The notes under the pieces are model-generated. The model ran no database searches. It saw nothing but the letters and a program-made list of their open reading frames with translations, and had not been told where the DNA came from. Position numbers and translations under genes: made by a program. From IMG/VR virus record IMGVR_UViG_3300010885_076238, positions 124,001 through 188,000 of that record: a stretch of 64,000 bases of DNA. One strand, 5' to 3'. Every line of letters starts with the position of its first letter. Within the stretch, counting starts at the first letter, position 1. Of the stretch, positions 24,396 through 41,654 are shown one piece after another.

Positions 24396-24577
24396 TCTGC
24401 ACAAATTCCAAGGAAACAAAATAAAATAAAAAATAATTTGTTTCCTCTACGGAATTAGGCTCCTATAATTAATATTTTATAGGGTCGAAACACCTGATGT
24501 TTATTTTTGGTGCAGCACTTTCTACTACTTATAGAGAGGCGGTCAAAAATAATTTTCCTCTTCGACCGTTATGCAGT

Positions 24578-25183
24578 ATGGCAGCGATTGAGACTGCCAA
24601 GCTCAACTGGGAACATGAAATGTATCTGGTTCTGATGATTAGCAACAACCGCGTCACCTACGCAAAGGCGTTTGACCAGTGGGATTCGGCTGTGCTGTGT
24701 GCTGACAACGTGGTTATGGATATTGCCGGGGTTTCAAACGATATGCTCGATTGGGAGAACGGCGATTACCGCACGGTCTACGAGCATACAAACGGCACTA
24801 CAGTGACGATTGAGACGCTGGACGGGCCGGGAGCTAAGAGTTCGGAAATTCTTGGTTCGTAAGAAATAATTTTCGATCTAGTTCGTTATCCCAATGTGGC
24901 AGCGATTGAGACTGCCGCAGCAACCGGAGCAAAAAAGATGAAGAAAAATGTTTGGTTGAGTTCTGACCCCGCAAACACCGAGGGCGGAGACATGGGCTTC
25001 TGGTGGAATCGTGGTTGCAACAGCATTGCCGCTGTCTCTGTTGATGAAACCGGGCTGCGTTTCGATGGCAGCGACTTCACGGTCGTCATCGACAACCCAG
25101 GCCAGACCAACGAGAGCGTGAAAGTGCTGGTCAACGACGTGGTCGTCTTCGGTTCTGTCAAGACCAAGGCCAAGGCGAGTTGA
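24578..25183 (+). other. two hypothetical CDS (24578 or 24620-24862; 24896 or 24938-25183)
   Basis: Each follows a promoter plus hairpin. Confidence 0.65.
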
Positions 25184-25270
25184 GTCCTACCCTCCCCTGC
25201 CCATCAAGGGCAGGGGAGGGAGCTAGAAAATAATTTTCAATCCAGTTCGTTATACAAGTAGGAGAAAAAA

Positions 25271-25633
25271 ATGAGAATTACTGCTAAAGAAGCTGCTGAT
25301 CGTTTGCGTGTGAGTTATGTAGTTGCTGCGGGCATCATGGCCCACCTAGAAGAGACAGGCGCAGCGAAGGTTGTGGAAAAGAAGTTCCATGCCAGCGGGA
25401 AGGGAAAGCCGACTCGCGTGTATGAAGTTGAACAGCATACTGTGCTGAACTTCGGAGACGTTGCTGCTGCTGCCGCCGCACCCGTAGTCGAGCCAGTTGT
25501 AGTCGAGCCAGTTGTGTTCACGACTCCGGTTGTCGAGGCTCCGGCTGTTGTCGAGGTTGTCGAGGAGAAGATCGAAACGCTCGACCATGTAGCGGCTGCG
25601 TTGGCTCGACTCAAGGCCGACAACGCCGCGTGA
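25271..25633 (+). CDS. small winged-helix-like protein, paralog 2
   Basis: N- and C-termini near-identical to 29296..29652. Confidence 0.8.
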   Translation: MRITAKEAADRLRVSYVVAAGIMAHLEETGAAKVVEKKFHASGKGKPTRVYEVEQHTVLNFGDVAAAAAAPVVEPVVVEPVVFTTPVVEAPAVVEVVEEKIETLDHVAAALARLKADNAA

Positions 25634-25674
25634 AATAAAAATTGATTTATTTCGTTATCTGATTAGGAGAAACA

Positions 25675-26061
25675 ATGACCACTACAAATCGTTCCCCCTA
25701 CACTGCCGCTGTACTTGAAGCCGACAGTCACACCACCCTAATGGGATGGGTTCGTGACAATCACGAAATCCCCGGCGATTTTCTGCTCAAGGGACACCAT
25801 TGCACTGCCGACACTAAGCCCGCCGCAAAAAGCTTGGCAGGCCATATGGTCGGCCAGCGTGTCGAACTGCGTGTTGTTCGATTCGGTCGGCTTGAAGGAA
25901 TTATGGCAGTAGAAGTAGAAACTGTGATGCCATCGAAGAATACTCGAAAGCACGTTACGATTTGCCATGCACCCGATGTCAAGCCCATGATGTCAAACAG
26001 CATAGTCGAATGGGTTGATGTGCAGCCGTTCATCCTGTACGGGGTAGTGCAGGAGGTGTAA
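25675..26061 (+). CDS. 2H phosphoesterase-like protein
   Basis: Two HxT motifs (HHCT, HVT) about 50 aa apart, KPMMSN. Confidence 0.7.
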   Translation: MTTTNRSPYTAAVLEADSHTTLMGWVRDNHEIPGDFLLKGHHCTADTKPAAKSLAGHMVGQRVELRVVRFGRLEGIMAVEVETVMPSKNTRKHVTICHAPDVKPMMSNSIVEWVDVQPFILYGVVQEV

Positions 26062-26148
26062 AGGCGAACACCTAATGTCTATAAAGCGGTTGGCTAGATA
26101 GCATAAAATAAAAATTGATTTATTTCGTTATCTGATTAGGAGAAATTC

Positions 26149-26325
26149 ATGGAAAATTTCGTAGGAAAAACTGTTGCGTCGGTAGAGTACCCATCCAAGT
26201 ACGCCCGAGTAGTTTTGACCTTTACTGATGGCACGAAGTTGCTTATAAAGGAAGTTGGGTACGAAGGTGAACTTGAGGTTCGAGTCGATGGAACTGTTGT
26301 GGAAGGCGAAGAGGATGGAGAGTAA
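26149..26325 (+). CDS. 58-aa hypothetical protein (not in ORF track)
   Basis: Promoter and AGGAG RBS; MENFVGKTVASV. Confidence 0.7.
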   Translation: MENFVGKTVASVEYPSKYARVVLTFTDGTKLLIKEVGYEGELEVRVDGTVVEGEEDGE

Positions 26326-26336
26326 GTAAACACCTA

Positions 26337-26654
26337 ATGTCTATAAAAATGCAGTGGATTAGTTTTTTCGGCCCGCGCCGTCCAATCAACGGACAAAAGA
26401 TTTTCTACTACGGCGAGCATATCGGCGTTTGGAGTGGAACGTACAGCCTAGACTGGAATGATCCGGTTAGCCCCCATAGGATAATTTGTGGGGAAAAGCC
26501 AAGCAAGGAAACCTCCGATGTATTGGCTGAGTACGGCTTGAACAATATCACCATGATTGTAGATCGAATGGATGCTCCTTGGTGGATGCCAGACGAGGGT
26601 CAGCCCAAGCCAGAAAAGCCAGATCAAAATTACCCGCCAGAATATCCAAAATAA
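26337..26654 (+). CDS. hypothetical protein
   Basis: ORF track; start uncertain. Confidence 0.6.
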   Translation: MSIKMQWISFFGPRRPINGQKIFYYGEHIGVWSGTYSLDWNDPVSPHRIICGEKPSKETSDVLAEYGLNNITMIVDRMDAPWWMPDEGQPKPEKPDQNYPPEYPK

Positions 26655-26691
26655 TTTTTAGTTCGGTTCGTTATACAAATAACAATACAAT

Positions 26692-27340
26692 ACGCGGCCT
26701 GCTGAAGTAGGTGGAACGTAACCACCTATACCAGTTCTGTGCGAGGAACTGGCAGGGGTAGTAGGGCAATCGCAAGCCCGAAATGAGAAAAGCCACAGCA
26801 ATTACCACCGTGGCCCGCGTAAAAATAATTTATTACAATGCGTAGGTTAAGCGTTGAGCAGCCAGCGGTTGGCGGGAGTACTACCACAACCGTCCGTTAG
26901 ACCAGCATAGGAAAGTGTGGGTAAAATCCCGCCGCATTGATAATTTTAGTTATGTGATTAGAGAGAACAAGACAGGGGACGCAAGGTTGTTCGCGGCTGT
27001 CGAAGGCCAAGACGGTTCGCTAAATAGACCTACGTTGAAGCAACATAGATCGCGTTCTGTGGCCGGTGCGACTCCGGGCGTCTCCTGTCCTGTTCTCTTG
27101 AAAAATAATTTTCCTTTCTGTTCGTTATGTGATTGTGGTGGGTTGCAAGGCCGGATGAACGGCTCCCCAATGGCTGTCATGAAAGCCGGGAAGTTGAATA
27201 GGTGGTCAAGTCGATGGTTTCAAACCAAAGGCGAATCCACTCACCCACATTTTTTCTTCTAATTTCTATATACAGCAGAGAGAACTCGCCAAGAGGCCCA
27301 ACGGCCACACTGGGAGAATTGGAGTAAGGAGCCTCTGCTG
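26692..27340 (+). ncRNA. cluster of five candidate structured RNAs (26692-26820, 26836-26939, 26962-27098, 27134-27249, 27273-27340)
   Basis: GC-rich blocks, each closed by a terminal helix, separated by AT-rich spacers or promoters. Confidence 0.65.
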
Positions 27341-27358
27341 GGTTTCAAAGGAGTAAAT

Positions 27359-29217
27359 ATGTCAAAGCAAGAAATGATCGAAATTGTGGATTCTCAGGTC
27401 AAGTACGGACTGCCCAGAGAGGAAGCAATCCGCCTACTAGCTTTCTTTATGGACGAAGATGATCCAGAGAACAACGCAGAGATTTGGTTTCAGCAAAAAA
27501 TCGGCGGCGGTTGAAAATAATTTCTGCCCTAATTCGTTATAAAATCAAGGAGATCATCAATGACACTTGCAGAAGCCCGCAAGATGGCCCAAGAAGATGC
27601 TGACGATTATCAAGTCGTCGTCAATCTGATCTATGACAAACTCGCTGAGTACCCTGTGACTGACGATGGCGAGGACAACCGATACGGATTCTGTGCAGTA
27701 GGTGCTATGGACATTATGTTTCCAGAATACCTCAAGGATTACTGGAACGTAGTGGGCGTGGTAAGCCCCAAGGGAGGAATATGAAAATGTTAGGAAGTTG
27801 CCATTGCGGATCAGGCCAGCCTAGTTGGTGGGAAAACGATGCCAGAGGAATCCCTCTTGCAAGAATTTGCGAAAAGTGCAAAGAGGAAAAGCTGTCTAAG
27901 TACCGACCAGAAGTTCTGTCTAACTCAAACTACGAGGCAGACGAACCTATAGAGCCAGAAGATTACTAAACGGAGAGAATAATTATGCAGGCGGACATAG
28001 CCACCTTGACCGTCAAGGCGAGGCAAAAGGCTCGCAAATGGGTCAAGGAAAGGCTGAAAATGCACCCCGGCAAGTTCGTGGTCAAACAAGGTGAGCAGTC
28101 TTGTCCTTGCTGGAACGGGGAAAACGCTATTCAGTTAGAGAACACGACCGACAGATGGAGCGGTTGGTTCCCCGTAACAGACATAGAAATCTCTAGCGAC
28201 AATGAAAAATAATTTTCACTTTTACTCGTTATCTATATATGGAACATTTAGGACATCAAAAATGGTGGTGCGACGTTTGCGACTCCAGGCAAGTGGATAG
28301 CAAAGATTCCACAACTGGTTCGTACTATCAAGTAGCTGGCATGGAACATCCAGCCAGATCAAAAGAAGAAAAATGGACATCCATTATTTTCGCTGTCTGC
28401 TGCGAGTGTGAACCAATCAAGGCTTTGCACAAAATCAAAGTCGAAAACCAAGTCGTTCGTAAAAATTAGCTAATATACAAAATATTAATTAGCCAATAAT
28501 TATTATTTTCAACACCTGATGTTTATATGGAAACTAGACGGGGGCAATAAAATAATTTTCATTTCAAATCGTTATGTTCTTAGGAGGACAATGAAATGAA
28601 AATTTGCACCACCGATTCTATCTTGGAAAGCATCACTCAAAACAAGTTTGATGATGAATCCAATTCTCGTTCTGGCCGCATGAGTGGCGAAATGATGCGA
28701 ATTGCCGACGAAGTCGAGCAAGAGCTAGAGGACGAGTTCATGGACGAGTGTGACGAGAGCAACAGGGAAGCGGCGTAAAGCCAGCATTTCCAAGGGTTTG
28801 CTGCTTGTCTCTTTTTTTTGGAAGCGCCGACCGACATTGGTCGTAGTTATCTCACAGGAGGAACCTATGTATCGAAATTATGAAGAATACGAATCTGCTT
28901 TCGACAAGTTGCTAGATAACGCTCCTGCAAACGTCAAAATCAAAAAAAAGACGAGACAGGAGTTCGATTACGAAAATTATCGTGACAAGATCGAATGGTA
29001 TTTGATGGAGGAATGGGGCACTGAGCCTTTCCACGAAATTTTCTTCGGCCATATCAGTGAGATCGAATCGGACGAGCCTACTCCCGAAGATTTTCGTGCA
29101 GAGGAATTGCATGGCTGCGTCTATGACATCATCGACAGTTGCTACGAGAAGAAATTCAGCGTGAATCAGGCAGCGTCGAAAATTTATTTGTATTTGAAAA
29201 AAGAGAAGGCCATCTAA
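27359..29217 (+). other. seven small CDS (27359-27514, 27560-27784, 27781-27969, 27985-28212, 28239-28469, 28596-28778, 28867-29217)
   Basis: RBS or leaderless starts after promoters; two carry Cys pairs. Confidence 0.65.
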
Positions 29218-29295
29218 TCAGGGCAAAATTTTTTTCGGTTCGGATCGTTATACCAATACAGGCCATGTGGCCTACTAACAAGGAGAAAAAGAAAA

Positions 29296-29652
29296 ATGCG
29301 TTTGACTGCGAAAGAAGCCGCCGAAAGGCTGAGTGTGAGTTATGTGATTGCCGCCGGTATTATGTCTTATCTTGAGGACACTGGTAAGGCCAAGGTTGTA
29401 GAGAAGAAGTTTCATGCAAGTGGGAAGGGTAAGCCAACCCGTGTCTATGAAGTAGATCAACTTACAGTGATTGACTTTGGTGATGCCGTTGCAAAGCCAG
29501 AAGTCGTGACGGTGACGGAGACAGTTGCAGTGACGGAGACGGTTGCGGTGACGGAGACGCTTCCAGCCGTGGCAGAGATTGCAGAGGATCGCGTCGAAAC
29601 GCTGGATCATGTCGCTGCGGCTCTGGCTAGGCTGAAGTCTGAGGCTGCGTAA
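29296..29652 (+). CDS. small winged-helix-like protein, paralog 3
   Basis: GKGKPTRVYEV; VTETVA tandem linker. Confidence 0.8.
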   Translation: MRLTAKEAAERLSVSYVIAAGIMSYLEDTGKAKVVEKKFHASGKGKPTRVYEVDQLTVIDFGDAVAKPEVVTVTETVAVTETVAVTETLPAVAEIAEDRVETLDHVAAALARLKSEAA

Positions 29653-29833
29653 TACGCGCCCATAGGAATCCATCCCCCTCTGCTTCTCAATCGCGGAGGG
29701 GGGTGGATAAACCTAAATTTGTGCTACTATAATAATACAACAATCGGCCGTCCGGCCGTGCCGCCACAAGCGCCACGGGTTGATTCCCCACGGGAGCCAG
29801 CCATCAAAGACCGGCCCGCCGATTATTGCACAA

Positions 29834-29917
29834 GCCGAAGTGGCGGAATTGGCAGACGCGCCAGACTCAAAATCTGGTGTCCAAAAAGACGTGTGGGTTC
29901 AATTCCCACCTTCGGCA
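29834..29917 (+). tRNA. trnL: tRNA-Leu(CAA)
   Basis: CCAGA-CTCAAAA-TCTGG; long variable arm. Confidence 0.95.
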
Positions 29918-30002
29918 GTAACACCTACCGTTTATTATTAATTAATAATAAACCTATAAAATAATTAGTTCGCTCAATCGTTATTTGGTATGGAGGAAGG
30001 AT

Positions 30003-32451
30003 ATGTTTAGCAGGGAAGATTTACTTACAATTTTAGCGTGTTTGGAATGTAAAGAATACAACACGCAAGGCAAGATAGATTCAAGAGTTCCAGTAGAGGA
30101 CGGCAAGAACGTCATCGACATCGTTGATATGTTGAACAGGATCGAAAAAATCAAAACTGTTATCAGGGATCAATTGTAAATTCCTAAAATAATTAGTTCG
30201 CTCAATCGTTATTTGGTATAGGGAAGATTTACTAAAAGAGAGAGTCTTATGATTTTCAAACTGTTCAATGGAGCAAAAACTACAGAGGCTTGGAATCCTA
30301 ATAGCCCTGAGTTTATTGACGATTGGAAACCGGAAGAACACATCATCAAGTGTCAGGCGGTTCAAGTTACTTACTGCAATCATATCAAAGTTCATGTTGA
30401 CGATGATATGATCGAGTTTCACTGGGACGAAGATGGCTTTATTGAACACGATGGCGTGTTTTATGGCGATTTCATCGTAGAAGGATAAATTACAAATGTC
30501 TAACAACTATGTCACAATGAACATAAGAATGTATGCCTCCAAGCCAGATAAGGTTATGGAGCAAGTCATTCTAAATCTTGGATGGGAATGGTACTCAGCA
30601 AGCAAGGCTTGTGAATACGCCAGAAAAGTTATAAAGGGCAGATGGATCAAAGGCGAAAGAAAGATCAAGAAAAATCCATACTCCGCCTACTTTTATGCTC
30701 GCCATGTTATCGGAGGAAGATGGCCCGAAGCAGAAAATTTTATCTTGAAGGATGAACACGCCTCTTACTTGTACGCTAAGTATGTTCTCAAAGGCAGGTT
30801 TGAGAAAGCAGAGAAAAAGAGAGGGCTTTTCAAGTCGCCTAGAGAAATATACTTCTACTCCAAATACGTTATGAAGTCTAGGTGGAAAGAAAAAGAAAAG
30901 TCTATGGTAGACTTTGTTGTAAAAAATACCTGGGGCTTTGAGAAGGTTTTCGACTACTGTATTCAGATCAGAAAAGAAAGATGGCCCCAAATTGAAGGCG
31001 AAATTGTAAAGTCCAGCAAAGAATACATCGGTCGTTATTTCAAATTATTGAAAGAAAAGGACAAGGAAGAATTTTATAATAAAGTTCTCGCCCAGTCTCT
31101 CGTAGAACCAAGAAGTTCTTGGCAACGAAACGAAGCCAGAGAATTTATCAAAACTATGAAAAACTAGTTTGAACATACTATTATAAAGTATGTATTCTGA
31201 AAAACATTGCATCATTACAATAAATGGCGACGAGTGTACCGTAGAGGGAAAATGCCTACTGACCGATAAACGTCAATTTGTAAAAGTAGCAAAGGAAGAT
31301 TATGAAAAATGGGTCAGGGGAGAAGGAGCTATAAAAACTCTTATGCCCTATCTAACCGAAAGCGAAATGAACTTTCTTGAACACGGCGTTACAGATGAAG
31401 GTTGGGGAAAAGTAGTAAGTCCAAAAATTTCAATCCCAAAAGCAGAGTAGCCCGCACAAATTTAGACGGCAATATCTTATAAATATTCTGCCTCGCATTC
31501 GTTACGACTAAAAACATATAAAATAATAATTGTCATAAAAATAAAAATCACCTGATGTTTATATGGTCAGCAGAAGGATAAAAATAATTTTCGATCCAGT
31601 GCGTTATGGAAATATAAGTTCCACAACCGGAGAAAAGGTATGACAAAGAGAGAGCAGCAGACGGTAAAAAGGATGCTGGAAACGGGCCGCGTGATTGATT
31701 TCCGTGACGAACGCCGACCGGGGGAAGTCGCGGAGGATGGCAACGGCTTGTGGGCATACCTCAAACCTGGCCTGAGATGCAGTCTGTCCGACACCCACAT
31801 TTGCCACGAATATACGGTGGCTGACCTAGCTCGTGCCGTCAAGTGGGCTGAACCGTGCAATTGCAACGAGTGCAATATAAAATAATTTTCGATCCAGTGC
31901 GTTATCCCAGCAGAGGAGACAATTATGCCAAACTGGTTTGAAGATCCCGCCGTTTTGGATAAGTGGACGATCATTGAAGTTCAGTTGGATGAAGCCGACT
32001 GTCAAGAATACAACGAGTACCTTGACTGGCTTGAGGCAACAACCGGCGAACAAGAGATGCCAGAAGATTTTTCTTACTAGTAAAAAATAATTTTCGATCC
32101 ATTTCGTTATAGAAAACAGGAGAAAAAATAATGATTACTGCAAAAAATGCGTTAGAAGCACTTTGTCGTGATGGACTCGCTACAAGTTGGACGAGGAAAA
32201 CTGAGGGTAGCGGAAGGCTTCGCTACACAGATTACACTGTGAAAAGCGATGCCTTTTCCCTCTCAAACGAAACCTATGGACAAAGAAGTTTTTTATACTT
32301 TCGATGCAAAAGCCCAGAACTTACTTATCAAATAATCAAAGTTCTTCGTGAAAATGGAGGCAACCCAGGAACTAGTTGGAATGGTGGGCCTGAACAGGGA
32401 CACATCGAAATGCAAGTCAGTAGGTTCAAAGGTTGGCATTGGTGGGAGTAA
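30003..32451 (+). other. small hypothetical CDS (30003-30179, 30249-30488, 31190-31450, 31640-31885, 32131-32451)
   Basis: Each behind a promoter or RBS. Confidence 0.6.
30496..31167 (+). CDS. helical-repeat phage protein (AYxYAxxVIxGRWPEAE)
   Basis: Five repeats of about 23 aa. Confidence 0.75.
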   Translation: MSNNYVTMNIRMYASKPDKVMEQVILNLGWEWYSASKACEYARKVIKGRWIKGERKIKKNPYSAYFYARHVIGGRWPEAENFILKDEHASYLYAKYVLKGRFEKAEKKRGLFKSPREIYFYSKYVMKSRWKEKEKSMVDFVVKNTWGFEKVFDYCIQIRKERWPQIEGEIVKSSKEYIGRYFKLLKEKDKEEFYNKVLAQSLVEPRSSWQRNEAREFIKTMKN

Positions 32452-32716
32452 GAAGCACAAAAATAAAAATAAAGTCTAGCCCAACCTGCCCAATACATAT
32501 TCATACAGAATGGCAGGTTGGGCTTAGGTGCTTAAACACCTAGTGTTTATTATAAGAATAAATAAAAAATTGGGGTTGGGCGCATTTCTATCGCTCTTAT
32601 CGCTGTGACAATTTGATAACGATTCTTTTCAAAAATAATTTTCCCAAAAATTATTTTCCCTTTCGACCGTTGTGCAGTATGGCCGCGATTGAGACGGCCA
32701 AGCCAAATCGGGAAAC

Positions 32717-33298
32717 ATGAAAATGGATACGATGACTTCGGATCAGTTGGTTGACCGTCTGCTTGATCTGCGTGGTGCGAAGTGCGGCTTTCGCATGGTC
32801 GCTGAAACCCCGACCCGTCTGAATAAGACGATTCGTGATGCGGCGGGCAATCGCGTTCCGAACCCCGCCTACGGCACTACAAAGTTGTCGGAAGTGGAAG
32901 TGACGCTGAACCCGATCCATCAGAACAACGTAAACGCTCAGAAAAAGCGTGAGGGACACGATCCCGATTACGTTGCTGGGCCTTGCCAGTGGGGCAAGCG
33001 TCTGTTTCGGGAGGATGGTACGGTCGTGCCGATTCGGATTCACGACGGCAAGCCGCATAGCATGGTCGTGAAGTTTGAGAGAACGATCCAACGCGAGTTC
33101 CTCCGCGACGGCAAGCCGGTTGATGCGGCATCGGCCGCAGAGATTGCAAAGCAGTTGGCAGAGAAGAATGAAAAGGCCAACGACGCTGCGGAAGAAAAGC
33201 AGGGCGTGGAAAAGCCGGTGATCCACTTGACCTACAGTTTCGAGAACATTCGTCAAGTCACGCTCGACGGCGTGGTTTACGAAATCACTAAGGGTTGA
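32717..33298 (+). CDS. hypothetical phage protein
   Basis: Promoter, hairpin and terminator; GC-rich codons. Confidence 0.8.
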   Translation: MKMDTMTSDQLVDRLLDLRGAKCGFRMVAETPTRLNKTIRDAAGNRVPNPAYGTTKLSEVEVTLNPIHQNNVNAQKKREGHDPDYVAGPCQWGKRLFREDGTVVPIRIHDGKPHSMVVKFERTIQREFLRDGKPVDAASAAEIAKQLAEKNEKANDAAEEKQGVEKPVIHLTYSFENIRQVTLDGVVYEITKG

Positions 33299-33412
33299 CC
33301 GATCCGGCCCCTCCCCCTACTGGGGGAGGGGTTAGGGGATAAAGAATAATTTCCGATCCGGTTCGTTATCTAGTATGGCCGCGATTGAGACGGCCAAAAA
33401 AGGAGAGCGATC

Positions 33413-33649
33413 ATGACCTACCTTCACGACATTCACCCCGCCGCGACGATCATCGAAAGCCCGTTCACCGGCCACAACGGCAGCGGAGTCGATGGATACG
33501 GCGGGAAAATCAAAACCGGATTCAAGGTCAGAATCAACAATCGACTCCATAGGCTCTACTGTATGTGCTGGTCGAACTCTGGCACACTTTGGGTCAACGT
33601 GGGCGGGAAGCAGATCATCGTTCACGAGCATCGGCATCCAAGGGAATAA
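33413..33649 (+). CDS. hypothetical phage protein
   Basis: GYGGKIKT...RLYCMCWSNSGT motif. Confidence 0.75.
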   Translation: MTYLHDIHPAATIIESPFTGHNGSGVDGYGGKIKTGFKVRINNRLHRLYCMCWSNSGTLWVNVGGKQIIVHEHRHPRE

Positions 33650-33856
33650 AATCCCATTCATCAAACACCTGATGTTTATATAGCGGCGGACGAGCCGCGC
33701 CGAGCCTGGGCTGGGCGCATTTCTATCGCTCTTGTCCCTCTGACATTTTGATAACGAATTAGATGGAAAAAAATTTTGGCCAAAATTATTTTGGCTTTCG
33801 ACCGTTATGCAGTATGGCCGCGATTGAGACGGCCAGCCTTAGTGGGAGATTGAATC

Positions 33857-34798
33857 ATGGCTCATAAAGTCGAAAACATGTTCTACGTTGGCGAGACGCC
33901 TTGGCATGGTCTGGGCGTTGCTTTGGAAGAGGCTCCGATCATTTCCGACGCCATTACGGCGGCGGGTCTGGATTGGACTGTCGGACTCCGCGACCTTTTC
34001 ACGGCAGACGGCGTAAAGGTGCCGAATCGTGCGACGGTTCGCGAGACGGACGGAAGTGTGCTGGGCGTTGTCGGCCCGCGTTACACTCCGCTCCAAAATG
34101 CGGCGGCTCTCGACTGGTTTCAGCCGTTCATCGACAGCGGAGAGGCTTCGCTTCACACTGCCGGTAGCCTTGACGAGGGTCGCAAGGTCTGGGTGCTTGC
34201 CCAGTTGAACCGCGACCCCAGTGTGATCGTTCCGGGCGACGACGTTCGCAAGTTCATTCTCTTGTCGAATTCGCACGACGGCACGACGGCGGTTCGTCCG
34301 GGTTTCACGCCGATTCGCGTTGTCTGTGCGAATACGCTCGCGGCGGCTCATTGCTCGACCGCCAGCAAGTTGATTCGCGTTCGTCACACTCGCAAGATTG
34401 CGACGAATTTGGAAAAGGTTCGCGAGTTGATGAACGCCGCGAACGCGGAATTCGAGGCGACTGCCGACCAGTATCGGCATCTTGCCAGCAAGGCGTTCAA
34501 CCAGACCGACGTTCGCAAGTACGTCAAGGTGCTGCTCGACGTTGAGACGGTTTCGGATGCCGACCTGCCCACTCGCACCAAGAATACCATCGAGGAAATT
34601 CTTGGACTGATCGAGGGGCCGAAGCAATCGATGCCGGGCGTTCAAGGCACTTGGTGGGCCGCGTACAACGGGTTCAACGAATACTTGAACTACAATCGCG
34701 GTCGCACGACCGACAACCGTATGAACAGCCTATGGTTCGGCATGGGTGCGACCGACAACCGCAAGGCTCTCGACCTTGCCCTTAGCTTGTCGGCCTAG
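33857..34798 (+). CDS. DUF932/DUF945 (TIGR03299-like) phage/plasmid protein
   Basis: PWHGLG, AGLDW, LQN, AGSL, NSHDG, TPIRVVCANT, RHT, GTWWAAYN. Confidence 0.92.
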   Translation: MAHKVENMFYVGETPWHGLGVALEEAPIISDAITAAGLDWTVGLRDLFTADGVKVPNRATVRETDGSVLGVVGPRYTPLQNAAALDWFQPFIDSGEASLHTAGSLDEGRKVWVLAQLNRDPSVIVPGDDVRKFILLSNSHDGTTAVRPGFTPIRVVCANTLAAAHCSTASKLIRVRHTRKIATNLEKVRELMNAANAEFEATADQYRHLASKAFNQTDVRKYVKVLLDVETVSDADLPTRTKNTIEEILGLIEGPKQSMPGVQGTWWAAYNGFNEYLNYNRGRTTDNRMNSLWFGMGATDNRKALDLALSLSA

Positions 34799-34918
34799 TG
34801 CGAACGATGCCCCCTACCCGAAAGGGTAGGGGGGATTCATCGTAAAATTATTTTCGGTTTGATTCGTTATCTAGTATGGCCGCGATTGAGACGGCCAAGC
34901 CAATCGGGAGACCTAATC

Positions 34919-35107
34919 ATGATCATCGCCGCCATCCTCGCCGCCGCGTACGTCGCTTTCGGCATCGCCGGGACATCGTACGTCAACCGTTGGATTCGCA
35001 ACGCTGACGACGGGGATGCAGGCTGCGGCCTGTCGAGCCTGCACATTCTCAACCCCATCATGGTGGTGGTTGGAGCGAGAATGATGCTCGACAAGCTGTC
35101 CTCCTAG
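34919..35107 (+). CDS. small membrane protein, copy 1
   Basis: Duplicate of 41326..41520. Confidence 0.75.
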   Translation: MIIAAILAAAYVAFGIAGTSYVNRWIRNADDGDAGCGLSSLHILNPIMVVVGARMMLDKLSS

Positions 35108-35237
35108 CGGGGGGCAGCCGCCCAACTCAACACCTAATGTTTATTGGCAAAGGTGAGCAATAAAAAATAAATTCCCAGCTAATTCGTTATCTAGTATGGC
35201 CGCGACAGTGACGGCCAAGCCAATCTAGGAAATAACG

Positions 35238-35579
35238 ATGGCTCGCAAGCGTAGGTCAGACCGTAATCACGCGGTCTATCAGATTGTTTGCAAACCAACT
35301 GGAGAGCGTTACATCGGACTGACGGTAGTGCGTGGAAGAGCCGTTCAGAAGAGCGTGAAGATTCGTTGGGACGGCCATGTTCATCACGCCGTAGTAGAGA
35401 GAGACAACCCGCTTCAACGTAGAATTCGTGAGTTTGGCCCCGAAGCATTTTCTCACGAACTGCTTCAAGTTGTGAGAGGCAAGCAGCCCGCTCATGACAT
35501 TGAAAGGGGCTTGATCGTCAATATGAAGCCCGAACTGAATGTGGAGTGTACCGGCAAGAAACAAGCAAATCGTTCCTAA
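35238..35579 (+). CDS. GIY-YIG nuclease family protein
   Basis: AVYQI...RYIGLT...RW...H...E...LN. Confidence 0.8.
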   Translation: MARKRRSDRNHAVYQIVCKPTGERYIGLTVVRGRAVQKSVKIRWDGHVHHAVVERDNPLQRRIREFGPEAFSHELLQVVRGKQPAHDIERGLIVNMKPELNVECTGKKQANRS

Positions 35580-35635
35580 TTTTTTCGACTCTCATTCGTT
35601 ATACAAATGTAGCCACCACCCCAAGCAGGAAAAAA

Positions 35636-36389
35636 ATGACTATCACAGAAGTCATCACGCCCGGCCCAGGCGGATTCAAATTTCTCAACATGACGAACGA
35701 GAAGTTCGACTCGTTCACCGCAGACGAAATCATTGCCGCTGCGGAAGCGGCCGGTCTGTGGACATACTACGAACTGGACGACGACGGGAAGCTGACCGGC
35801 TTGGCGATCACCACGAAAGAAAGAGAGCCAAACGGATAGCGGGCTTTGGCCCAATGCTCTAACACCTAATGTTTATAATCAACAGTGAGTTGCTTGCCAA
35901 AACCAAAGGAGCCGGACATGGAAACTTTTGAGCAGTGGTGCAAGAGGATGCAAGAAGAACACGATCAATGGATTTCAAGTCCCGAAGGACAAATCTGGAT
36001 CAAGGGCTAAAAATTATTTTCGGTTTGATTCGTTATCAAGTATGGCCGATCATTCAACACCTAAGGAACAAGTCATGAAAGCCAAAGAAGTGCAGATTGG
36101 ACAGGAGTTCTACACCAACTACGCGAGCATGGAACACTGCAAGCCGCTGTCTAACGTTCATCGTTGGAAAATGATCGCTCCAGAGCATCGGTTGGCGCAG
36201 CTTGTGCTTGTCACCGGGGACGTTTGCGATCACACTCGCATCATCGATGAAAAGGAAGAAGTGTTCGCCACAGCCGGTGAAGCTTGGCAAGATTGTGCGA
36301 CTCAACTCAACGCGATCATCGAAAAGATTCGTGAAGCCGTCAAGGATTGCGAGTCCAAAGTTCCCCGCCAGTGCAAGGAATCCGCGTGA
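35636..36389 (+). other. two hypothetical CDS (35636-35839, 36075-36389)
   Basis: Promoter and RBS; starts shortened relative to the ORF track. Confidence 0.65.
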
Positions 36390-36448
36390 AAAAGGGGGCT
36401 TGGGAAACCAAGTCCCCAATAATTAACACCAAATGTCTATTATAGAGT

Positions 36449-36733
36449 ATGAGACTATTTATTGATGACATCAGAACTCCATCCGAAGACTACATCGTTC
36501 TCCGGTCTTCTGAGGATGCCATTCAATTCATAAAGCAAAATGGCTGGCCTGAGTTCATCAGTTTTGACCACGATCTTGGCGGCGACGATACCACTATGGT
36601 CTTTCTCAAAAGGCTTGTAAACGAAGTATGGGACGGCAAAACCATGCCGCCAGACTATATCGTTCATAGTGCCAACCCAATTGGATCGAAGAACATCGTG
36701 AGTTTCATGGAAAGCTGGAAGAAGTCAATCTAA
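36449..36733 (+). CDS. cyclic-phosphate-processing receiver-like domain protein
   Basis: LFIDDIR, ISFDHDLG, VHSANPIG. Confidence 0.8.
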   Translation: MRLFIDDIRTPSEDYIVLRSSEDAIQFIKQNGWPEFISFDHDLGGDDTTMVFLKRLVNEVWDGKTMPPDYIVHSANPIGSKNIVSFMESWKKSI

Positions 36734-36807
36734 AAAATTTTTTTTACTTTCATTCGTTATACCAATATGGCAGCAATTGAGACTGCCGGATTACTAGGAT
36801 TGCTCTA

Positions 36808-37037
36808 ATGTTTGGACTCGTTTCTATGATTTTGTTTAGCGTCGGAACTATTGGATTTTTCTACGTCACTAAGGAGGGCAACTAATGTTTATCGTAATTG
36901 AGCAGAAGGAAGACGGCACGACTCAGATTCTTTCGCCCGTAATCAACGACCAGAAAGAAGCAGAAGTAGAGGCTGCTTGGATTTCCCACCTGAACGGTTG
37001 GAGTTGCACAGTAAAGCAAGTGGATCAAGCCGCTTGA
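36808..37037 (+). other. two coupled mini-CDS (36808-36885, 25 aa hydrophobic; 36885-37037, 50 aa ending QAA)
   Basis: TAATG overlaps, AAGGAGG RBS. Confidence 0.6.
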
Positions 37038-37169
37038 AACAATCGGCAGTAAACCTGCCACCCAACCCAAAAGGTTGGGCCATTAGCAAATACCTAATGT
37101 TTATTGTTGAATCGAACCTGATAAAAATAATTTTCGATCTAGTTCGTTATAGATTTAGGAGGACGTTTT

Positions 37170-38589
37170 ATGACTAAGCCCGTTGAAATCTCAACCAAGG
37201 AAATGTGGGAACTCTCAGCAGTGGGAGCCTGCATTCTTCTAGCTGTTCAAGAGATGGAAGAAGATGCTGTCGGCAGGCAAAAGGTGATCGAAGCGGGAAA
37301 CCGTTTGTTCGATCTCATGGGCAAAATTGGAGAACGAGATGATTGGTCATCCAGAAGCCCAAAAGGAGAGGAAAAAGTATGAAAAAAACTGTCGGAGCAA
37401 CCAAGGCTCACGCATCATGCGGATATTGCAAACACTTGCGCAAGTTCGGAAAGCGACTTGCCAATAAGGCTTCTCGCAAACACGGAAATAATTTTCGATT
37501 CAATGCGTTATCAAATATAGAGAATCCCAACCCCGGAGAATAATCATGTTCAAGAAGAAAACCGATGGTCGATTCCGTGTCGAGCTGAAGTATAAGAACG
37601 GCAGCGAAGCATTCATGGTCAGCAACGACTACCAGCAAATCTGCCGCCTGTACGAGCTTGCCAGAACTCCCATTTGCGAAAATTTCACACAGTCGATCTA
37701 CGAAGTGATCTTGTTCGACGGCGATAAGCCCCTTGCAAACTGGACTAACTCAGCCGCATTAGTCAAAGTGGCTTGACAATCCTAGGCGATTCTGGGTAGG
37801 GCCGGTCTCATGAGCCGGATTGGGTAGCACCCCCCGCGTGGTTCGATTCCACGACTCGCCATTTAGAATGCGGTAAAATGCAACAAGGAGCAAACCATGA
37901 ATACTGAATTTTATGTGGGCGAACACCGTGGTATCTGGGTAGGCCCAGTCATCCGAAATAAACAGACGAATCATCCTGTGGCATTCGTCGCAGCCGGATC
38001 AGAACACTTTTCCGAAATATTATCCCTAGCACCAGAAATGCTTGAAGCACTACGGAAAATCAGGAATAACTCAGACAACGCGGAAGTCAACAAAATCGCA
38101 TCAGAAATCCTACTCAAGGCAACCAAACACGCCTAATCGTCAACACCTAATGTTTATTTCCCGAACGGGACAATTCAGACAAAAATCAGGCAATTTATAA
38201 TAATTATTCCCGCTCGGGAAAGTTAGGTAATCTGTGCAAGCCCATAAAAGAAAATAAAAAATCCAAGGCCCGATTGACGATAGATAAGGTACGGGACAGA
38301 AAACCATTCAAAGGAGTGAATCATGTTGGCTTGGATCGGAATCGCAATAACCGCCGTTGGAATGATTTTTAGTAGCTATGAGTTCGTGAAAAAAAATCCA
38401 GAACTCTTGCCCAAAGTTCAAAACGTACAACTGCTGGCCCATCGTCAACGTCAATCAGCGTTCATGTACAGTCAAGTAAATTTGGCCTATGATGTTGTGA
38501 ACGGAAAACATTGGTTTCAACACCCAGACGGTCAGTGGAGAGAATTCCCACCAAAACCCTCTCAAGTCGATATGCAAAACAGCCGATAA
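37170..38589 (+). other. small CDS (37170-37382, 37379-37543, 37546-37776, 37897-38136, 38323-38589)
   Basis: RBS-supported ORFs. Confidence 0.6.
37785..37861 (+). tRNA. D-arm-less tRNA-like gene, CAU anticodon
   Basis: CCGGT-CTCATGA-GCCGG; CGTGG-TTCGATT-CCACG; GGCGATT/ACTCGCC. Confidence 0.65.
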
Positions 38590-39213
38590 ATAAAATAAGG
38601 AAAGGAATCCAAAATGAAAAAAATCAACTGGAACCAAATCGTCAACGCTCTTATTCTTGTCAAAATAGGACAAGACTTAGGAACCAACTCGCAACTTACC
38701 CAATCCATCCATCATATCATCGACGTTATTGCTACGTTCGCTAATGCCTTTGTAAGAATATAAAATAATTTCTCGATCAGTTCGTTATACAATAGTGGCC
38801 GTCCCATTCTCAGGAGAGCAAACATGAACACTGACACCAACTGGACTTACGAGCGCGAGGGAGCCAAAGAGATGATCGCAAGGCTCGAAGAAGAAATTCA
38901 GAATTCGACCTCCAAGCAGGATCGAATCAACAAACAGGAAGAAATACAAAGACTCCAATCGTAAAGAGTCAAAAAATAATTTTCAATCCCGTTCGTTATA
39001 CAATAGTGGTCAACTAAAGGTGCTGACTGAAAGTGACACACGGCGGACAAGGTGGCCGACCGCAGGATCAGCACCACTCTAAAGGATCAAAAATGTATCT
39101 GACTCTCAATGATTGGATGATGCTCGTTGGACTGATTTCTTTCGCAGGATTCTGTTCCTACACTGCCCACGAAATTCAAGGTGCAATCCACAACTACTTA
39201 CATGGAGAATATA

Positions 39214-39558
39214 ATGATTTTTGAAGTTGAAATGCTCGCGTTCGGAAAACCAGGAGAAGTTCGCAAGGTCAATGTTCCCGATGAGGCTCTAACTCGCGCA
39301 AAAGAAGATACAGACAATATTCTTGAAGCCGCGTTTTATTACGGCCAAAACGATTTCCAGCCGCAAAACCACCCGTCAGTAAGTGCTGGCGATGTGATCC
39401 GCTGGAAAGAAGAAAACTATCTGGTTGCTGGTATGGGTTTCAAAAAGCTGACCGATGAACAACTAAATGATTATCGATCTCTCGACCAAAACGATAAGTT
39501 CATCGGAAGATGCCAAATTGAAATAGGCGAACCAGTAGTAGGACGCAGAAACAAGTAA
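39214..39558 (+). CDS. YodL-like protein
   Basis: HPSVSAGDVI...YLVAGMGFKKL. Confidence 0.65.
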   Translation: MIFEVEMLAFGKPGEVRKVNVPDEALTRAKEDTDNILEAAFYYGQNDFQPQNHPSVSAGDVIRWKEENYLVAGMGFKKLTDEQLNDYRSLDQNDKFIGRCQIEIGEPVVGRRNK

Positions 39559-39753
39559 CCTGCACAATTCCATCAAACCATCAAAGCCCTAATAAATAAT
39601 AAATATCGCTTACGAAAGTGATATTTATAGGGCTTTATCTAACACCTAATGTTTATAAAACATCGCTAGTCGAAAAAAATAATTTTCGATCCAGTGCGTT
39701 ATGCCAATGTGGGCAGCAATTGAGACTGCCCCCGTTTTCAGGAGGTTTGAATC

Positions 39754-39963
39754 ATGGGTGACGAAGATTCCTTTCTCGATTCGCGTTGGGAAGAAATTTG
39801 CGAGTATGAAGACTCGTACGAGCAAGAGGATTGCTTCGATGACTTCGACGATGAAGATGATGAATACGATTGCTTCAGCGAAGACGACAACGACGACTTT
39901 GAAGACGACTTCGCTGACGACAACTACGACGACTACGACGACTTCTACGAGGAAGCCGCGTGA
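39754..39963 (+). CDS. extremely acidic 69-aa protein
   Basis: AGGAGG RBS; D/E with F/Y spacing. Confidence 0.75.
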   Translation: MGDEDSFLDSRWEEICEYEDSYEQEDCFDDFDDEDDEYDCFSEDDNDDFEDDFADDNYDDYDDFYEEAA

Positions 39964-40108
39964 AAATAGGGGGCTTGGGAAACCAAGCTTCCCCCAACTA
40001 TCAACACCTAATGTTTATAATGCCAACCCGCCGGAAACTTCTCGAAGAAAAATAATTTTCCATTCAAATCGTTATAAATCATCGGCCCAAAACCCTGAGG
40101 ATCAAATC

Positions 40109-40654
40109 ATGAGCTACGAAAACGCCCCCGCCACCATCATGCTCGCGACCCACTGCTGCTGCTGCGGTCGCCCACTGGTCGATGCTATCTCTGTTGAGAT
40201 GGGTATCGGCCCCGATTGCCGTCAAGGTCGCACCGATGGCATTTCCAAAGAACAGCAAGAAATCTGCAACAAACTCACCCATGCCGCCGCTCTTGCCGCG
40301 CAGGAAGGTCAAGTCGAGAAGGTTCGCGCGATTGCCGCCGAAATTGCCGCTCTAGGTCTGACTGAATTGGCCGATAAGGTTCAGCACCGTTTCGTCAACG
40401 CTGAAAGATTGGCAAAGATCAATATCATTCAGACCGGCGACCGTCTGACCGTTACAACCCCGTGGAAACGTAGCAGCGACTTTGTTGCCGCATGGAGAAC
40501 CATTCCCGGCAGACGATATGGCGGGGCCGGTAAGAACATCATCCCCCTTAGCAGCAAGGGTGAGTTGTGGAATCTGCTACAGAAGTTCTTCCCCGGCCAA
40601 TTCGGCAAGGGGCCAAAGGGACTGTTCAGAGTCCCTAAGAACGAGGCGGCTTGA
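40109..40654 (+). CDS. DUF6011-like zinc-finger protein
   Basis: CCCCGRPLVDAISVEMGIGPDC. Confidence 0.8.
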   Translation: MSYENAPATIMLATHCCCCGRPLVDAISVEMGIGPDCRQGRTDGISKEQQEICNKLTHAAALAAQEGQVEKVRAIAAEIAALGLTELADKVQHRFVNAERLAKINIIQTGDRLTVTTPWKRSSDFVAAWRTIPGRRYGGAGKNIIPLSSKGELWNLLQKFFPGQFGKGPKGLFRVPKNEAA

Positions 40655-40836
40655 CTGCCTGCACAAATTATATGCCCCCGAAATCCAAATGGAGAGTAGG
40701 GGTCGCGTTATACAGAAAAAACTTTAGAAATAAATATTAATACCTAATGTTTATTTTTATTCGCGCCGGTAGCCGGTAGCCGGTCGAGTTCGCCGGTAGT
40801 AAAAAAATAATTTCCGATCCGGTTCGTTATACCAAT

Positions 40837-41169
40837 ATGGCCGCGATTGAGACGGCCAGCCAATCGGGAGGATGGGACATGGCGACTTGGATCAACGGCG
40901 ACCCGGTGAATGTTGTTGCAGGCATGATCAGGAGCCGCTGGTTGCTTCTGCCCGCAACTTGGTTTGAATCAGGCATGGGCGTCAAAGTGGACGACGAACG
41001 CAAATTCGTCCATGTGATCGACCGACGCGGAAAGCCCGTGGGCAATCCCATAAAGTTTTGGGATGATGCTCCGGCCGGTGGCGGATCAAAAGAAGATGCC
41101 ATCAACGAGTGCAAAGCATTCGGAGAGACATACGCACAAATTTTCCGCCCCCGAAATCCACAAGGATAG
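40837..41169 (+). CDS. hypothetical protein (start 40837 or 40879)
   Basis: Promoter, hairpin, GGAGG. Confidence 0.65.
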   Translation: MAAIETASQSGGWDMATWINGDPVNVVAGMIRSRWLLLPATWFESGMGVKVDDERKFVHVIDRRGKPVGNPIKFWDDAPAGGGSKEDAINECKAFGETYAQIFRPRNPQG

Positions 41170-41325
41170 TAGGGGTCGCGTTATACAGAAACGGCAGAAA
41201 ATATTTGGCCTGCCACTTAACACCTAACGTTTATTTTTGATGGTGGGCAGCAAAAAATAATTTTCGGTTTGGTGCGTTATCTAGTATGGCCGCAATTGAG
41301 ACGGCCAGCCAATCGGGAGCTTGTC

Positions 41326-41520
41326 ATGATCGCCATCGTCATCGTCACCGCCGCGTACGTCGCTTTCGGCATCGCGGGGTACTCGTACGTCAACCGTTGG
41401 ATTTGCCACGGCCTTGACGACGGCAATGAGTCTGGAACTGGCCTGTCGTGCTTGCACATTCTCAACCCCATCATGGTGGCGGTTGGAGCGAGAATAATGC
41501 TCGACAAGCTGTCCTCCTAG
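41326..41520 (+). CDS. small membrane protein, copy 2
   Basis: Duplicate of 34919..35107. Confidence 0.75.
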   Translation: MIAIVIVTAAYVAFGIAGYSYVNRWICHGLDDGNESGTGLSCLHILNPIMVAVGARIMLDKLSS

Positions 41521-41654
41521 CGGAGGGCAGCCGCCCAACCAAACACCTAATGTTTATAAGTGAGCGAACGCGCGGCTCCCGAATAATTTTCAATTTCATT
41601 CGTTATCCAGTATCGCCGCACTTGTGACGGCAGGCCGACCATAGGAACCAACCC

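What the first reader, a model, noticed from the sequence alone, without database searches (positions are those of the whole stretch)
26692..26820. 129-nt multi-junction RNA with a kissing loop and a second pseudoknot
Seen: behind its own promoter (CGTTAT 26669): ACGCGG/CCGCGT, CCTG/CAGG, TAGGTGG/CCACCTA, CCAGTTC/GAACTGG, GGGC/GCCC, GCCAC/GTGGC. Loop TGCGA is complementary to loop TCGCA, and junction GGTAGT to loop ATTACC. There is no ORF. Inference: ribozyme-grade complexity, function unknown.
Basis: partly seen in the sequence, partly recalled or inferred. Interest (0 to 1): 0.72.

Follow-up and report, generated by a model that had tools for sequence, protein, structure and literature searches.

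The report
Exchangeable folded small RNA cassette in phage
The 129-base stretch is a real folded RNA matching no known RNA family; a group of uncultured freshwater phages carries it as an interchangeable cassette in strings of structured RNAs, and its function is still unknown.

Summary

**Setting.** The window is part of a 204-kb uncultured freshwater phage. CGTTAT belongs to a phage promoter, AATAATTT-N11-12-CGTTAT, found about 30 times on this strand.

**Known families.** No Rfam 15 family matches, even at E<=10.

**Support for the fold.**
- Four sequence variants were found.
- Every stem difference in P1, P3, P4 and P5 is compensatory. One P4 pair is seen as G-C, A-U and U-A.
- P2, P6, the L4-L5 kissing pair and the J2/5-L6 pseudoknot never vary, so they are plausible but unproven.

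**Cassette behaviour.**
- In related phages the same RNA sits between AAUACAA linkers, in a slot between two conserved structured RNA blocks.
- That slot lies in a promoter-to-terminator non-coding operon.
- The slot is empty in about 15 relatives. In others it holds at least 10 unrelated cassettes, some tRNA-like.
- The cassette is 99-100% identical in arrays whose flanks are only 52-64% identical.

**Interpretation.** It is an autonomous, exchangeable small RNA. It most likely acts in trans, by inference, and is not a cis-regulator.

**Open points.** No RNA-seq run was available, so transcription, catalysis and any ligand or protein partner are untested. It is a new orphan RNA class of moderate to high interest.

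The parts
26650..26674 (+). Phage-specific promoter: AATAATTT (26650-26657), 11-nt spacer, CGTTAT (26669-26674). It overlaps the stop codon of the upstream 105-aa gene.
   Evidence: The motif AATAATTT-N(6-16)-GTTAT occurs about 30 times on the + strand and once on the minus strand. It nearly always lies 10-25 nt before an AGGAG-type ribosome site.
26675..26691 (+). Short leader ending in the linker AATACAA(T) (26684-26691). The transcription start is inferred to lie near 26680.
   Evidence: The same AATACAA(T) precedes the homologue in L053, L082 and L094. The leader carries deletions in the X4 variant while the RNA body is kept.
26692..26820 (+). The structured RNA ('mod1'), 129 nt. It is a four-way junction (P1, P2, P5, P6), and P2 opens into a three-way junction (P3, P4).
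   Evidence: There is no Rfam match.
26692..26697 (+). P1, 5' strand. It pairs with 26815-26820, and 7 bp form if U26691-A26821 is counted.
   Evidence: The helix is kept as 6-7 bp in the L053 type despite different sequence and register. That needs matched changes on both strands.
26698..26701 (+). P2, 5' strand CCUG. It pairs with CAGG 26753-26756.
   Evidence: Invariant in all variants. Supported only by the energy model.
26708..26728 (+). P3 hairpin: 7 bp with a 7-nt loop AACGUAA.
   Evidence: Two pairs change G-C to A-U in L053. L082 shows the G.U intermediate, which fixes the + strand as the RNA strand.
26731..26752 (+). P4 hairpin: 7 bp with loop L4 UGUGCGAG (26738-26745).
   Evidence: Pair 26733-26750 changes A-U to G-C. 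Pair 26734-26749 is seen as G-C, A-U and U-A. L4 has 3 substitutions, all outside GCGA.
26740..26744 (+). Proposed kissing interaction: UGCGA in L4 with UCGCA in L5 (26770-26774).
   Evidence: GCGA/UCGC are invariant. The fifth pair is lost in the L053 type. There is no covariation. Duplex energy is -6.8 kcal/mol.
26757..26762 (+). J2/5 GGUAGU, proposed pseudoknot with AUUACC in L6 (26801-26806).
   Evidence: Invariant. One G.U pair. Duplex energy is -6.9 kcal/mol. It competes with a nested alternative in the minimum-energy fold.
26764..26779 (+). P5 hairpin: 4 bp with loop L5 AAUCGCAA.
   Evidence: The closing pair changes G-C to A-U in both the L053 type and the X4 variant.
26780..26791 (+). 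A-rich junction J5/6, GAAAUGAGAAAA.
   Evidence: One A-to-G change in the X4 variant, at 26783. Otherwise invariant.
26792..26814 (+). P6 hairpin: 5 bp with a 13-nt loop L6.
   Evidence: Invariant in all variants.
26836..26939 (+). Neighbouring module 'mod2', closed by CAAUGCG/CGCAUUG. In relatives it occupies the very slot that mod1 occupies in L053.
   Evidence: Homologues in L051, L023, L043 and L008. Present in four DNA runs.
26961..27099 (+). Module 'mod3', closed by a long helix.
   Evidence: Fold z-score -5.0, with 0 of 200 shuffles as stable. A variant copy is present in run X4.
27104..27358 (+). A second promoter copy (AATAATTT at 27104) and module 'mod4' (core about 27138-27248), running into the ribosome site of a 51-aa ORF (27359-27514).
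   Evidence: Related to the first module of the arrays in L051, L053, L020 and L008.

Best explanation
**What it is.** 26692-26820 (+) encodes an autonomous, compactly folded small RNA of about 130 nt.

**Transcription (inferred).**
- It is transcribed from a phage-specific early-type promoter (26650-26674).
- It is the first bead of a roughly 700-nt string of four closed structured modules that ends at a small ORF.

**Fold.**
- P1 closes a four-way junction.
- P2 carries a three-way junction (P3, P4).
- P5 and P6 form the 3' half.
- The two halves are probably locked together by an L4-L5 kissing contact and a J2/5-L6 pseudoknot. This step is inferred.

**Cassette behaviour (shown).**
- The RNA is an accessory, exchangeable cassette.
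- In related phages it lies between AAUACAA linkers, in a slot between two conserved structured RNA blocks of a non-coding operon.
- That slot is empty in some relatives and filled by unrelated cassettes, tRNA-like ones included, in others.

**Why a closed module can move.** P1 brings the two ends together, so the module can be inserted, moved or given its own promoter without disturbing its neighbours.

**Most likely mode of action (inferred, not shown).**
- It works in trans as a folded RNA, perhaps after release at the AU-rich linkers.
- It would bind a protein or small ligand during host takeover or counter-defence, as a decoy or sponge.
- It would not act as a regulator of a downstream gene.
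For: **It is a real RNA fold.**
- Window versus L053 core (117 nt) shows 13 substitutions. Ten of them form 5 fully compensatory pairs and 3 lie in loop L4.
- None of 200,000 random simulations reached 4 or more compensatory pairs.
- A third variant adds G-C to U-A in P4 and G-C to A-U in P5.
- P1 is kept as 6-7 bp despite a different sequence.
- A G.U intermediate in L082 fixes the strand.

**It is autonomous.**
- It has its own promoter copy.
- In run X4 the unit of promoter plus RNA lies at a different place relative to the 105-aa gene.
- The window genome lacks the D and E blocks that flank it in relatives.

**It is a cassette.**
- Filled and empty slots can be compared directly, and at least 10 other cassettes use the slot.
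- The cassette is 99-100% identical where the flanks are 52-64% identical.
- The array modules are true structured RNAs. The D block has 14 covarying pairs, and the E block is also structured.
- tRNAs and tRNA-like modules sit in the same strings.

**It is not cis-regulatory.**
- No terminator or expression platform follows it.
- The next ORF is about 540 nt away.
- The downstream neighbour differs between contexts.

**It matches no known family**.
Against: - No transcript data exist. No RNA run was listed, so expression, ends and processing are all inferred.
- The family is tiny: four sequence variants in about five genomic backgrounds.
- P2, P6 and both tertiary contacts carry no covariation.
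- The trans-acting decoy or sponge role is inference from context only. No partner is identified.
- In several relatives the strings lead straight into a ribosome site. A role as part of a long 5' leader therefore cannot be excluded.
Confidence: 0.55

Rival explanations
1. It is a new class of self-cleaving ribozyme that cuts the string of beads at or near its own boundary.
For: - Its complexity is comparable to small ribozymes.
- Related phages carry pistol ribozymes in the same kind of tRNA and non-coding RNA regions. These include L029, L054 and L058, and the L053 phage only 5.4 kb from its mod1 copy.
- A viral 2H phosphoesterase-like gene lies two ORFs upstream. Such enzymes open 2',3'-cyclic phosphate ends.
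- Published work finds ribozymes beside phage tRNAs (PMC10879173).
Against: - No ribozyme model matches, even at E<=10.
- Unrelated cassettes, or none at all, occupy the same slot, so array processing cannot depend on it.
- In the window it is the first unit after a promoter, with only a leader of about 10 nt to remove.
- The window phage has no pistol ribozyme.
Confidence: 0.12
2. It is a peripheral domain of one large ornate RNA, of the GOLLD or ROOL kind, formed by the whole non-coding tract.
For: - It is embedded in 700-1000-nt non-coding transcription units with conserved blocks, variable inserts and embedded tRNAs.
- These occur in freshwater phages, as described for GOLLD (preprint 10.1101/2024.12.08.627333 for the class).
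Against: - Neither the window tract nor two relatives' arrays match GOLLD or ROOL at E<=10.
- Each module is closed by its own helix.
- Module order and content differ between phages.
- The window lacks the D and E blocks.
- mod1 has its own promoter.
Confidence: 0.1
3. It is a trans-acting regulator whose L5 loop (AAUCG) kisses the CGAUU loop of a hairpin found at the 5' end of ten early phage mRNAs. L4 would act as an internal competitor.
For: - Ten copies of UGGCNG-CRAUUGAGA-CNGCCA lie 7-8 nt after the promoter box.
- Seven of them carry CGAUU, which is complementary to L5.
- L4 offers the same GCGA.
Against: - This is a post hoc 5-nt match, and runs of that length are common by chance.
- The hairpin is absent from the L053 phage and four other relatives, although mod1 there has the same L5. 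That record is only 58% complete.
Confidence: 0.07
4. It is a ligand-sensing aptamer, acting either as a riboswitch in cis or as a small-molecule sponge in trans.
For: - The architecture is a closing P1, a multi-way junction, loop-loop and pseudoknot contacts, and invariant junctions.
- This is typical of aptamers such as SAM-I or lysine (my own knowledge).
- The junction nucleotides are invariant.
Against: - No expression platform or adjacent regulated ORF is present.
- The downstream context is not conserved.
- No riboswitch model matches.
- The sponge idea has no precedent that I know of.
Confidence: 0.08
5. It is not a functional RNA. It would be chance inverted repeats, a DNA-level site, or a minus-strand small ORF.
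For: - One minus-strand frame is open across it.
- The fold z-score is only -2.8.
Against: - All stem substitutions are compensatory.
- G.U pairs work only on the + strand as RNA.
- The 2-nt length difference between variants breaks any spanning frame.
- The cassette is far more conserved than its flanks.
Confidence: 0.03

Closest known systems
Small stable RNAs of phage tRNA clusters (T4 species 1 and 2 RNAs, rnaC and rnaD) - my own knowledge
   Same: They are phage-encoded structured RNAs of about 120-140 nt with unknown function. They lie in strings with tRNAs and are released by processing. In relatives mod1 shares strings with tRNAs and tRNA-like modules.
   Different: No sequence similarity to any deposited phage genome. 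In the window the nearest tRNA is 3 kb away. Processing is not shown. mod1 has its own promoter.
GOLLD and ROOL large ornate RNAs (Rfam; preprint 10.1101/2024.12.08.627333)
   Same: They are phage- and lake-associated, lie next to or contain tRNAs, have conserved and variable parts with many pseudoknots, and have unknown function.
   Different: No model match at E<=10. mod1 is a 129-nt autonomous closed module that moves between contexts, not a fixed part of one 600-800-nt RNA.
Self-cleaving ribozymes in phage tRNA regions: pistol (RF02679) and theta/HDV-like (PMC10879173)
   Same: The genomic habitat is the same. Pistol ribozymes occur in the related phages.
   Different: No structural or sequence match. 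The HDV-type topology does not fit, because there is no room for P3 or P4 between the pseudoknot strands. Cleavage is untested.
Multi-junction riboswitch aptamers (SAM-I, lysine, cobalamin) - my own knowledge
   Same: A closing P1, a 4- or 5-way junction, a loop-loop kissing contact and a junction-loop pseudoknot tie two halves together.
   Different: No model match. No expression platform and no conserved downstream gene.

Membership tests
Any Rfam 15 family (4227 covariance models) | Score at or above the family's gathering threshold, or at least E<=10 with permissive filters | tested here: not met
   In the whole window at gathering threshold, only tRNAs, a tmRNA and a group I intron match, all elsewhere. 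Over 26300-27600 at E<=10 there are only two chance hits, both outside the element.
tRNA / tRNA-like | Cloverleaf with a T-arm, detected by ARAGORN or RF00005 | tested here: not met
   No call at 26692-26820. No GGTTCGANTCC-type T-arm is present, unlike the cassettes in L009, L049 and L051.
GOLLD / ROOL | Match to the family covariance model | tested here: not met
   No hit at E<=10 in the window tract or in the arrays of L051 and L012.
GOLLD / ROOL | Homo-oligomeric RNA-only assembly | not testable with these tools
Known self-cleaving ribozyme classes (hammerhead, twister, twister-sister, pistol, hatchet, HDV-like, hairpin) | Match to the class model or core motifs | tested here: not met
   No match. 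Pistol is found in relatives but not in this element or this genome.
Self-cleaving ribozyme (any, including a new class) | Site-specific self-scission giving 2',3'-cyclic phosphate and 5'-OH ends | not testable with these tools
   Needs an in vitro transcription and cleavage assay.
Riboswitch | Aptamer followed by an expression platform and a conserved regulated gene | tested here: not met
   No terminator-like site on the + strand after 26820. The next ORF starts at 27359. The downstream neighbour differs in L053, L082, L094 and the X4 variant.
Riboswitch | Specific ligand binding | not testable with these tools
   Needs in-line probing or ITC.
Phage tRNA-cluster stable RNAs (T4 species 1 and 2 type) | Co-transcribed with tRNAs and cut out as a stable small RNA | tested here: inconclusive
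   Relatives' strings contain tRNAs and tRNA-like modules. There are no transcript data. There is no similarity to any deposited phage genome.
Structured RNA (generic) | Base pairs kept through compensatory substitutions | tested here: met
   Met for P1, P3, P4 and P5. P2, P6 and both tertiary pairings are invariant and therefore uninformative.

The most novel reading that the evidence does not exclude
**The RNA.** mod1 is a new functional RNA class. It would be a self-cleaving ribozyme, or a high-affinity binder of a host protein or signalling nucleotide.

**The system around it.** It would travel as one cassette of a previously undescribed system in freshwater phages. That system consists of promoter-to-terminator operons made only of closed structured-RNA modules joined by AAUACAA linkers. 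They have a hot-spot slot where unrelated RNA cassettes are swapped between divergent phages. This would be an RNA counterpart of the variable accessory or anti-defence gene islands.
Probability: 0.2. Interest if true: 0.85.

Novelty: new variant of a known kind. Interest (0 to 1): 0.62.

Why it matters
- **A new orphan fold.** It adds a complex RNA fold supported by covariation that lies outside every curated family.
- **A broader pattern.** It also exposes an RNA-only 'string of beads' organisation in a large group of uncultured freshwater phages. These strings have conserved blocks (D, E), tRNA-like beads, pistol ribozymes nearby, and a slot where structured-RNA cassettes are exchanged.
- **What the exchange suggests.** The cassette is 99-100% identical inside flanks that are 52-64% identical. 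That points to selection or horizontal spread of an accessory RNA function during infection.
- **If a partner or activity is found.** It would show that phages trade folded RNAs the way they trade small accessory proteins. It would also supply a compact new RNA scaffold for structural and synthetic work.

Tried and rejected
**Searches for known families and homologues**
- Rfam at the gathering and E<=10 thresholds: nothing at the element.
- blastn against 50,697 phage records: nothing.
- Covariance model R1 over 67 loci and 54 whole related virus records: only the window and the L053 contig.
- The 27-bit hit in L071 lies inside a coiled-coil coding region. I rejected it as a false positive.
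- R1 with filters off over other cassettes: no remote relatives.

**Pattern scans**
- IMG/VR: only the L053 contig.
- One search used a mistyped spacer (5 N instead of 4). Its hits were random.
- Metagenome scan: 5 true copies, all of the two known types.
- Genome scan of 185,579 species: none true.

**Transcript and structure attempts**
- RNA-seq: no run was listed.
The RNA plus 105-aa protein job was not folded. This is no evidence either way.
- AlphaFold2 of the 128-aa neighbour without an alignment: pLDDT 41, unusable. PDB sequence search: nothing.

**Ideas tested and not supported**
- L5 pairing with the recurrent 5'-UTR hairpin: not supported by co-occurrence.
- HDV-like and twister-like readings of the pseudoknot topology: considered by eye and rejected.
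- A minus-strand ORF: rejected.

Full report
**Setting**

The window is bases 124001-188000 of a 204-kb IMG/VR virus record, 88% complete. It comes from freshwater metagenomes. It carries 13 tRNAs, a tmRNA and a group I intron, and it has no close relative among deposited phages. The finding lies in a 700-nt tract without credible ORFs. The tract runs from the stop of a 105-aa gene (26654) to a 51-aa ORF (27359).

**The observation**

- All six helices and both loop complementarities are present exactly as described.
- The minimum-energy fold recovers P1-P5, with z = -2.8.
- All three + frames have stops. One minus-strand frame is open, but it is not credible.
- The CGTTAT at 26669 is half of a bipartite motif, AATAATTT-N11-12-(T)CGTTAT.
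- I found this motif about 30 times on the + strand and once on the minus strand. Most copies lie in window 24.5-41.6 kb and directly precede ribosome sites.
- The 'own promoter' claim is therefore well founded, although the polymerase or sigma factor that reads it is unknown.

**Known families**

- No Rfam 15 model matches, at gathering score or at E<=10 with permissive filters.
- tRNA, GOLLD, ROOL, all riboswitch classes and all small ribozyme classes are therefore not met as memberships.

**Homologues and covariation**

*Search route.* I searched for the neighbouring 105-aa protein and obtained 66 related phage loci. nhmmer and a covariance model (R1) found one homologue, L053:978-1104, at 92% identity.

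*Further copies.*
- A metagenome pattern scan added copies identical to the window (L079, L089).
- It also added L053-type copies in other backgrounds (L082, L094, L091).
- Laying DNA contigs of four runs on the window revealed a third variant, in run X4.
- Scans of 54 whole related virus records, IMG/VR patterns and 185,579 prokaryotic genomes gave nothing more. The family is narrow.

*Window versus L053, 117-nt core.*
- There are 13 substitutions.
- Ten form five fully compensatory pairs: two in P3, two in P4 and one in P5.
- Three lie in loop L4, and none breaks a pair.
- No random simulation out of 200,000 gave 4 or more compensatory pairs.

*Other variants.*
- X4 adds G-C to U-A at 26734/26749. 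That pair is thus seen in three states.
- X4 also repeats G-C to A-U at 26764/26779.
- L082 shows a G.U intermediate in P3, which identifies the + strand as the RNA strand.
- P1 is 7 bp in the window and 6 bp in the L053 type. Its sequence and register differ, which needs matched changes on both strands.

*What remains uninformative.*
- P2, P6, GCGA/UCGC (L4-L5) and GGUAGU/AUUACC (J2/5-L6) never vary.
- A single Watson-Crick run of 5 nt between unpaired segments occurs in 19% of shuffles. Both contacts together occur in 0.6%.
- The tertiary contacts are reasonable but unproven.

**Context: a string of beads**

*In the window.*
- The tract 26655-27358 holds four closed modules: mod1, mod2 (26836-26939), mod3 (26961-27099) and mod4 (about 27138-27248).
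- Each has its own homologues in different relatives, and in a different order.

*In the relatives.*
- A sigma-70-like promoter (TTGACA-N17-TAGAAT) drives non-coding units of 700-1000 nt.
- These units end at a terminator-like hairpin or run into a ribosome site.
- They are built of closed modules joined by the linker AAUACAA. The linker occurs 2-7 times per array, against an expectation of about 0.07 per kb.

*Conserved blocks.*
- The D block is in 45 loci and has 14 pairs with compensatory changes.
- The E block is in 30 loci. It has a conserved frame with variable internal hairpins.

*The slot between D and E.*
- The linker is followed directly by E in about 15 loci, so the slot is empty there.
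- In others one or two cassettes sit between two linkers.
  - mod2 occupies it in L051, L043 and L023.
  - mod1 occupies it in L053.
  - tRNA-like modules occupy it in L009 and L049, and a stretch that includes a true tRNA occupies it in L061.
  - At least seven further unrelated kinds occur.

*Other features.*
- Pistol ribozymes occur in these phages next to tRNAs. One lies 5.4 kb from the mod1 copy of the L053 phage.
- None of the other modules matches Rfam.

**mod1 behaves as a mobile, autonomous cassette**

- It is 99-100% identical in L053, L082 and L094. The adjoining D and E blocks are only 52-64% identical, apart from the D blocks of L053 and L094, which are 96% identical.
- In the window it keeps its 5' linker AATACAA(T) but stands behind a promoter of the window phage's own type. 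That phage lacks the D and E blocks altogether.
- In the X4 relative the promoter-plus-mod1 unit lies upstream of the 105-aa gene, and mod2 follows a second promoter copy. The junction falls in the TACAAT repeats that bracket mod1.
- The leader between promoter and P1 carries deletions in X4, while the body from P1 to P1 is kept.
- These facts define the functional unit as P1-to-P1. They also argue that it works on its own.

**How it most likely works**

*Shown.*
- It is a conserved fold.
- A promoter motif precedes it.
- It has cassette behaviour.
- It has no expression platform and no conserved downstream gene.

*Inferred.*
- The RNA is made early in infection.
- It may be trimmed at the AU-rich linkers.
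- It acts in trans through its shape.
- An accessory presence-and-absence pattern with horizontal exchange is what one sees for host-takeover and counter-defence functions. I therefore rank a protein- or ligand-binding decoy or sponge first, with low confidence in the specifics.

*Rivals.*
- **New self-cleaving ribozyme.** The habitat is ribozyme-rich, and a 2H phosphoesterase-like gene with two HxT motifs lies two ORFs upstream. However, processing of the arrays cannot depend on an optional cassette.
- **Domain of a giant ornate RNA.** This is contradicted by its autonomy.
- **Kissing regulator of ten 5'-end hairpins whose loop CGAUU complements L5**. The hairpin is absent from the L053 phage.
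- **Riboswitch.** There is no expression platform.
- **Non-functional sequence.** This is excluded by the covariation.

**Novelty and verdict**

- The element is a real, new orphan structured RNA. It is not a member of any curated family.
- The nearest analogies are the small stable RNAs of phage tRNA clusters, and, for the arrays, GOLLD- and ROOL-like phage RNAs.
The tertiary contacts and any 'ribozyme' implication remain open.
- Transcription could not be checked, because no RNA run was listed.
- The complex-prediction job was not folded and counts for nothing.

Noticed in passing
window 24579-41287 (+), ten sites, for example 24579, 24897, 32680, 33376, 40838: A conserved hairpin UGGCNG-CRAUUGAGA-CNGCCA sits 7-8 nt after the CGTTAT promoter box, at the predicted 5' end of early mRNAs. 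It may be an operator or a stability element. It is absent from five related phages.
   Followed up: partly
window 24548-41582 and elsewhere in the genome (+): A phage-specific promoter motif, AATAATTT-N11-12-(T)CGTTAT, occurs about 30 times and is strongly strand-biased. Relatives use sigma-70-like TTGACA-N17-TAGAAT instead.
   Followed up: partly
L051:1446-1590 and 44 other loci (D block); L053:1115-1290 and about 29 loci (E block): Two widely conserved structured RNA modules are not in Rfam. The D block has 14 covarying pairs. The E block has a conserved frame with variable hairpin inserts. Between them is a variable slot bounded by AAUACAA linkers.
   Followed up: partly
L029:4913-4975; L054 and L058:5295-5357; G004:C1:35665-35727: Pistol ribozymes (RF02679, 54-56 bits) lie directly after an ORF and before a structured region plus a tRNA. 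This suggests ribozyme processing of mRNA-tRNA transcripts in this phage group.
   Followed up: partly
window 25675-26058 (+): A 128-aa ORF has two HxT motifs. It groups with viral 2H phosphoesterase (tRNA-ligase CPD-like, 'Swiss Army Knife') clusters and is distantly Acb1-like. It is probably an RNA-end-healing or cyclic-nucleotide phosphodiesterase.
   Followed up: partly
L051:1260-1358; L009 and L049 slot cassettes: tRNA-like modules have a normal acceptor stem and T-arm but a roughly 25-60-nt insert in the anticodon region. Rfam tRNA gives 35 bits, and ARAGORN does not call them.
   Followed up: no
window 60220-60355 (-): Rfam calls a 136-nt tRNA (56 bits) that ARAGORN does not report. It may be a tRNA with a large insert, next to tRNA-Ser at 60128-60215.
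   Followed up: no
window 8840-9015 (+); 60862-61213 (-): A group I intron (57.6 bits) and a phage-encoded one-piece tmRNA with the tag GTNSYAMAA.
   Followed up: no
window 26961-27099 (+): Module mod3 is a 139-nt element closed by a helix of about 20 bp (z = -5.0). No homologue was found in the 66 related loci, but a diverged copy is present in DNA run X4.
   Followed up: partly
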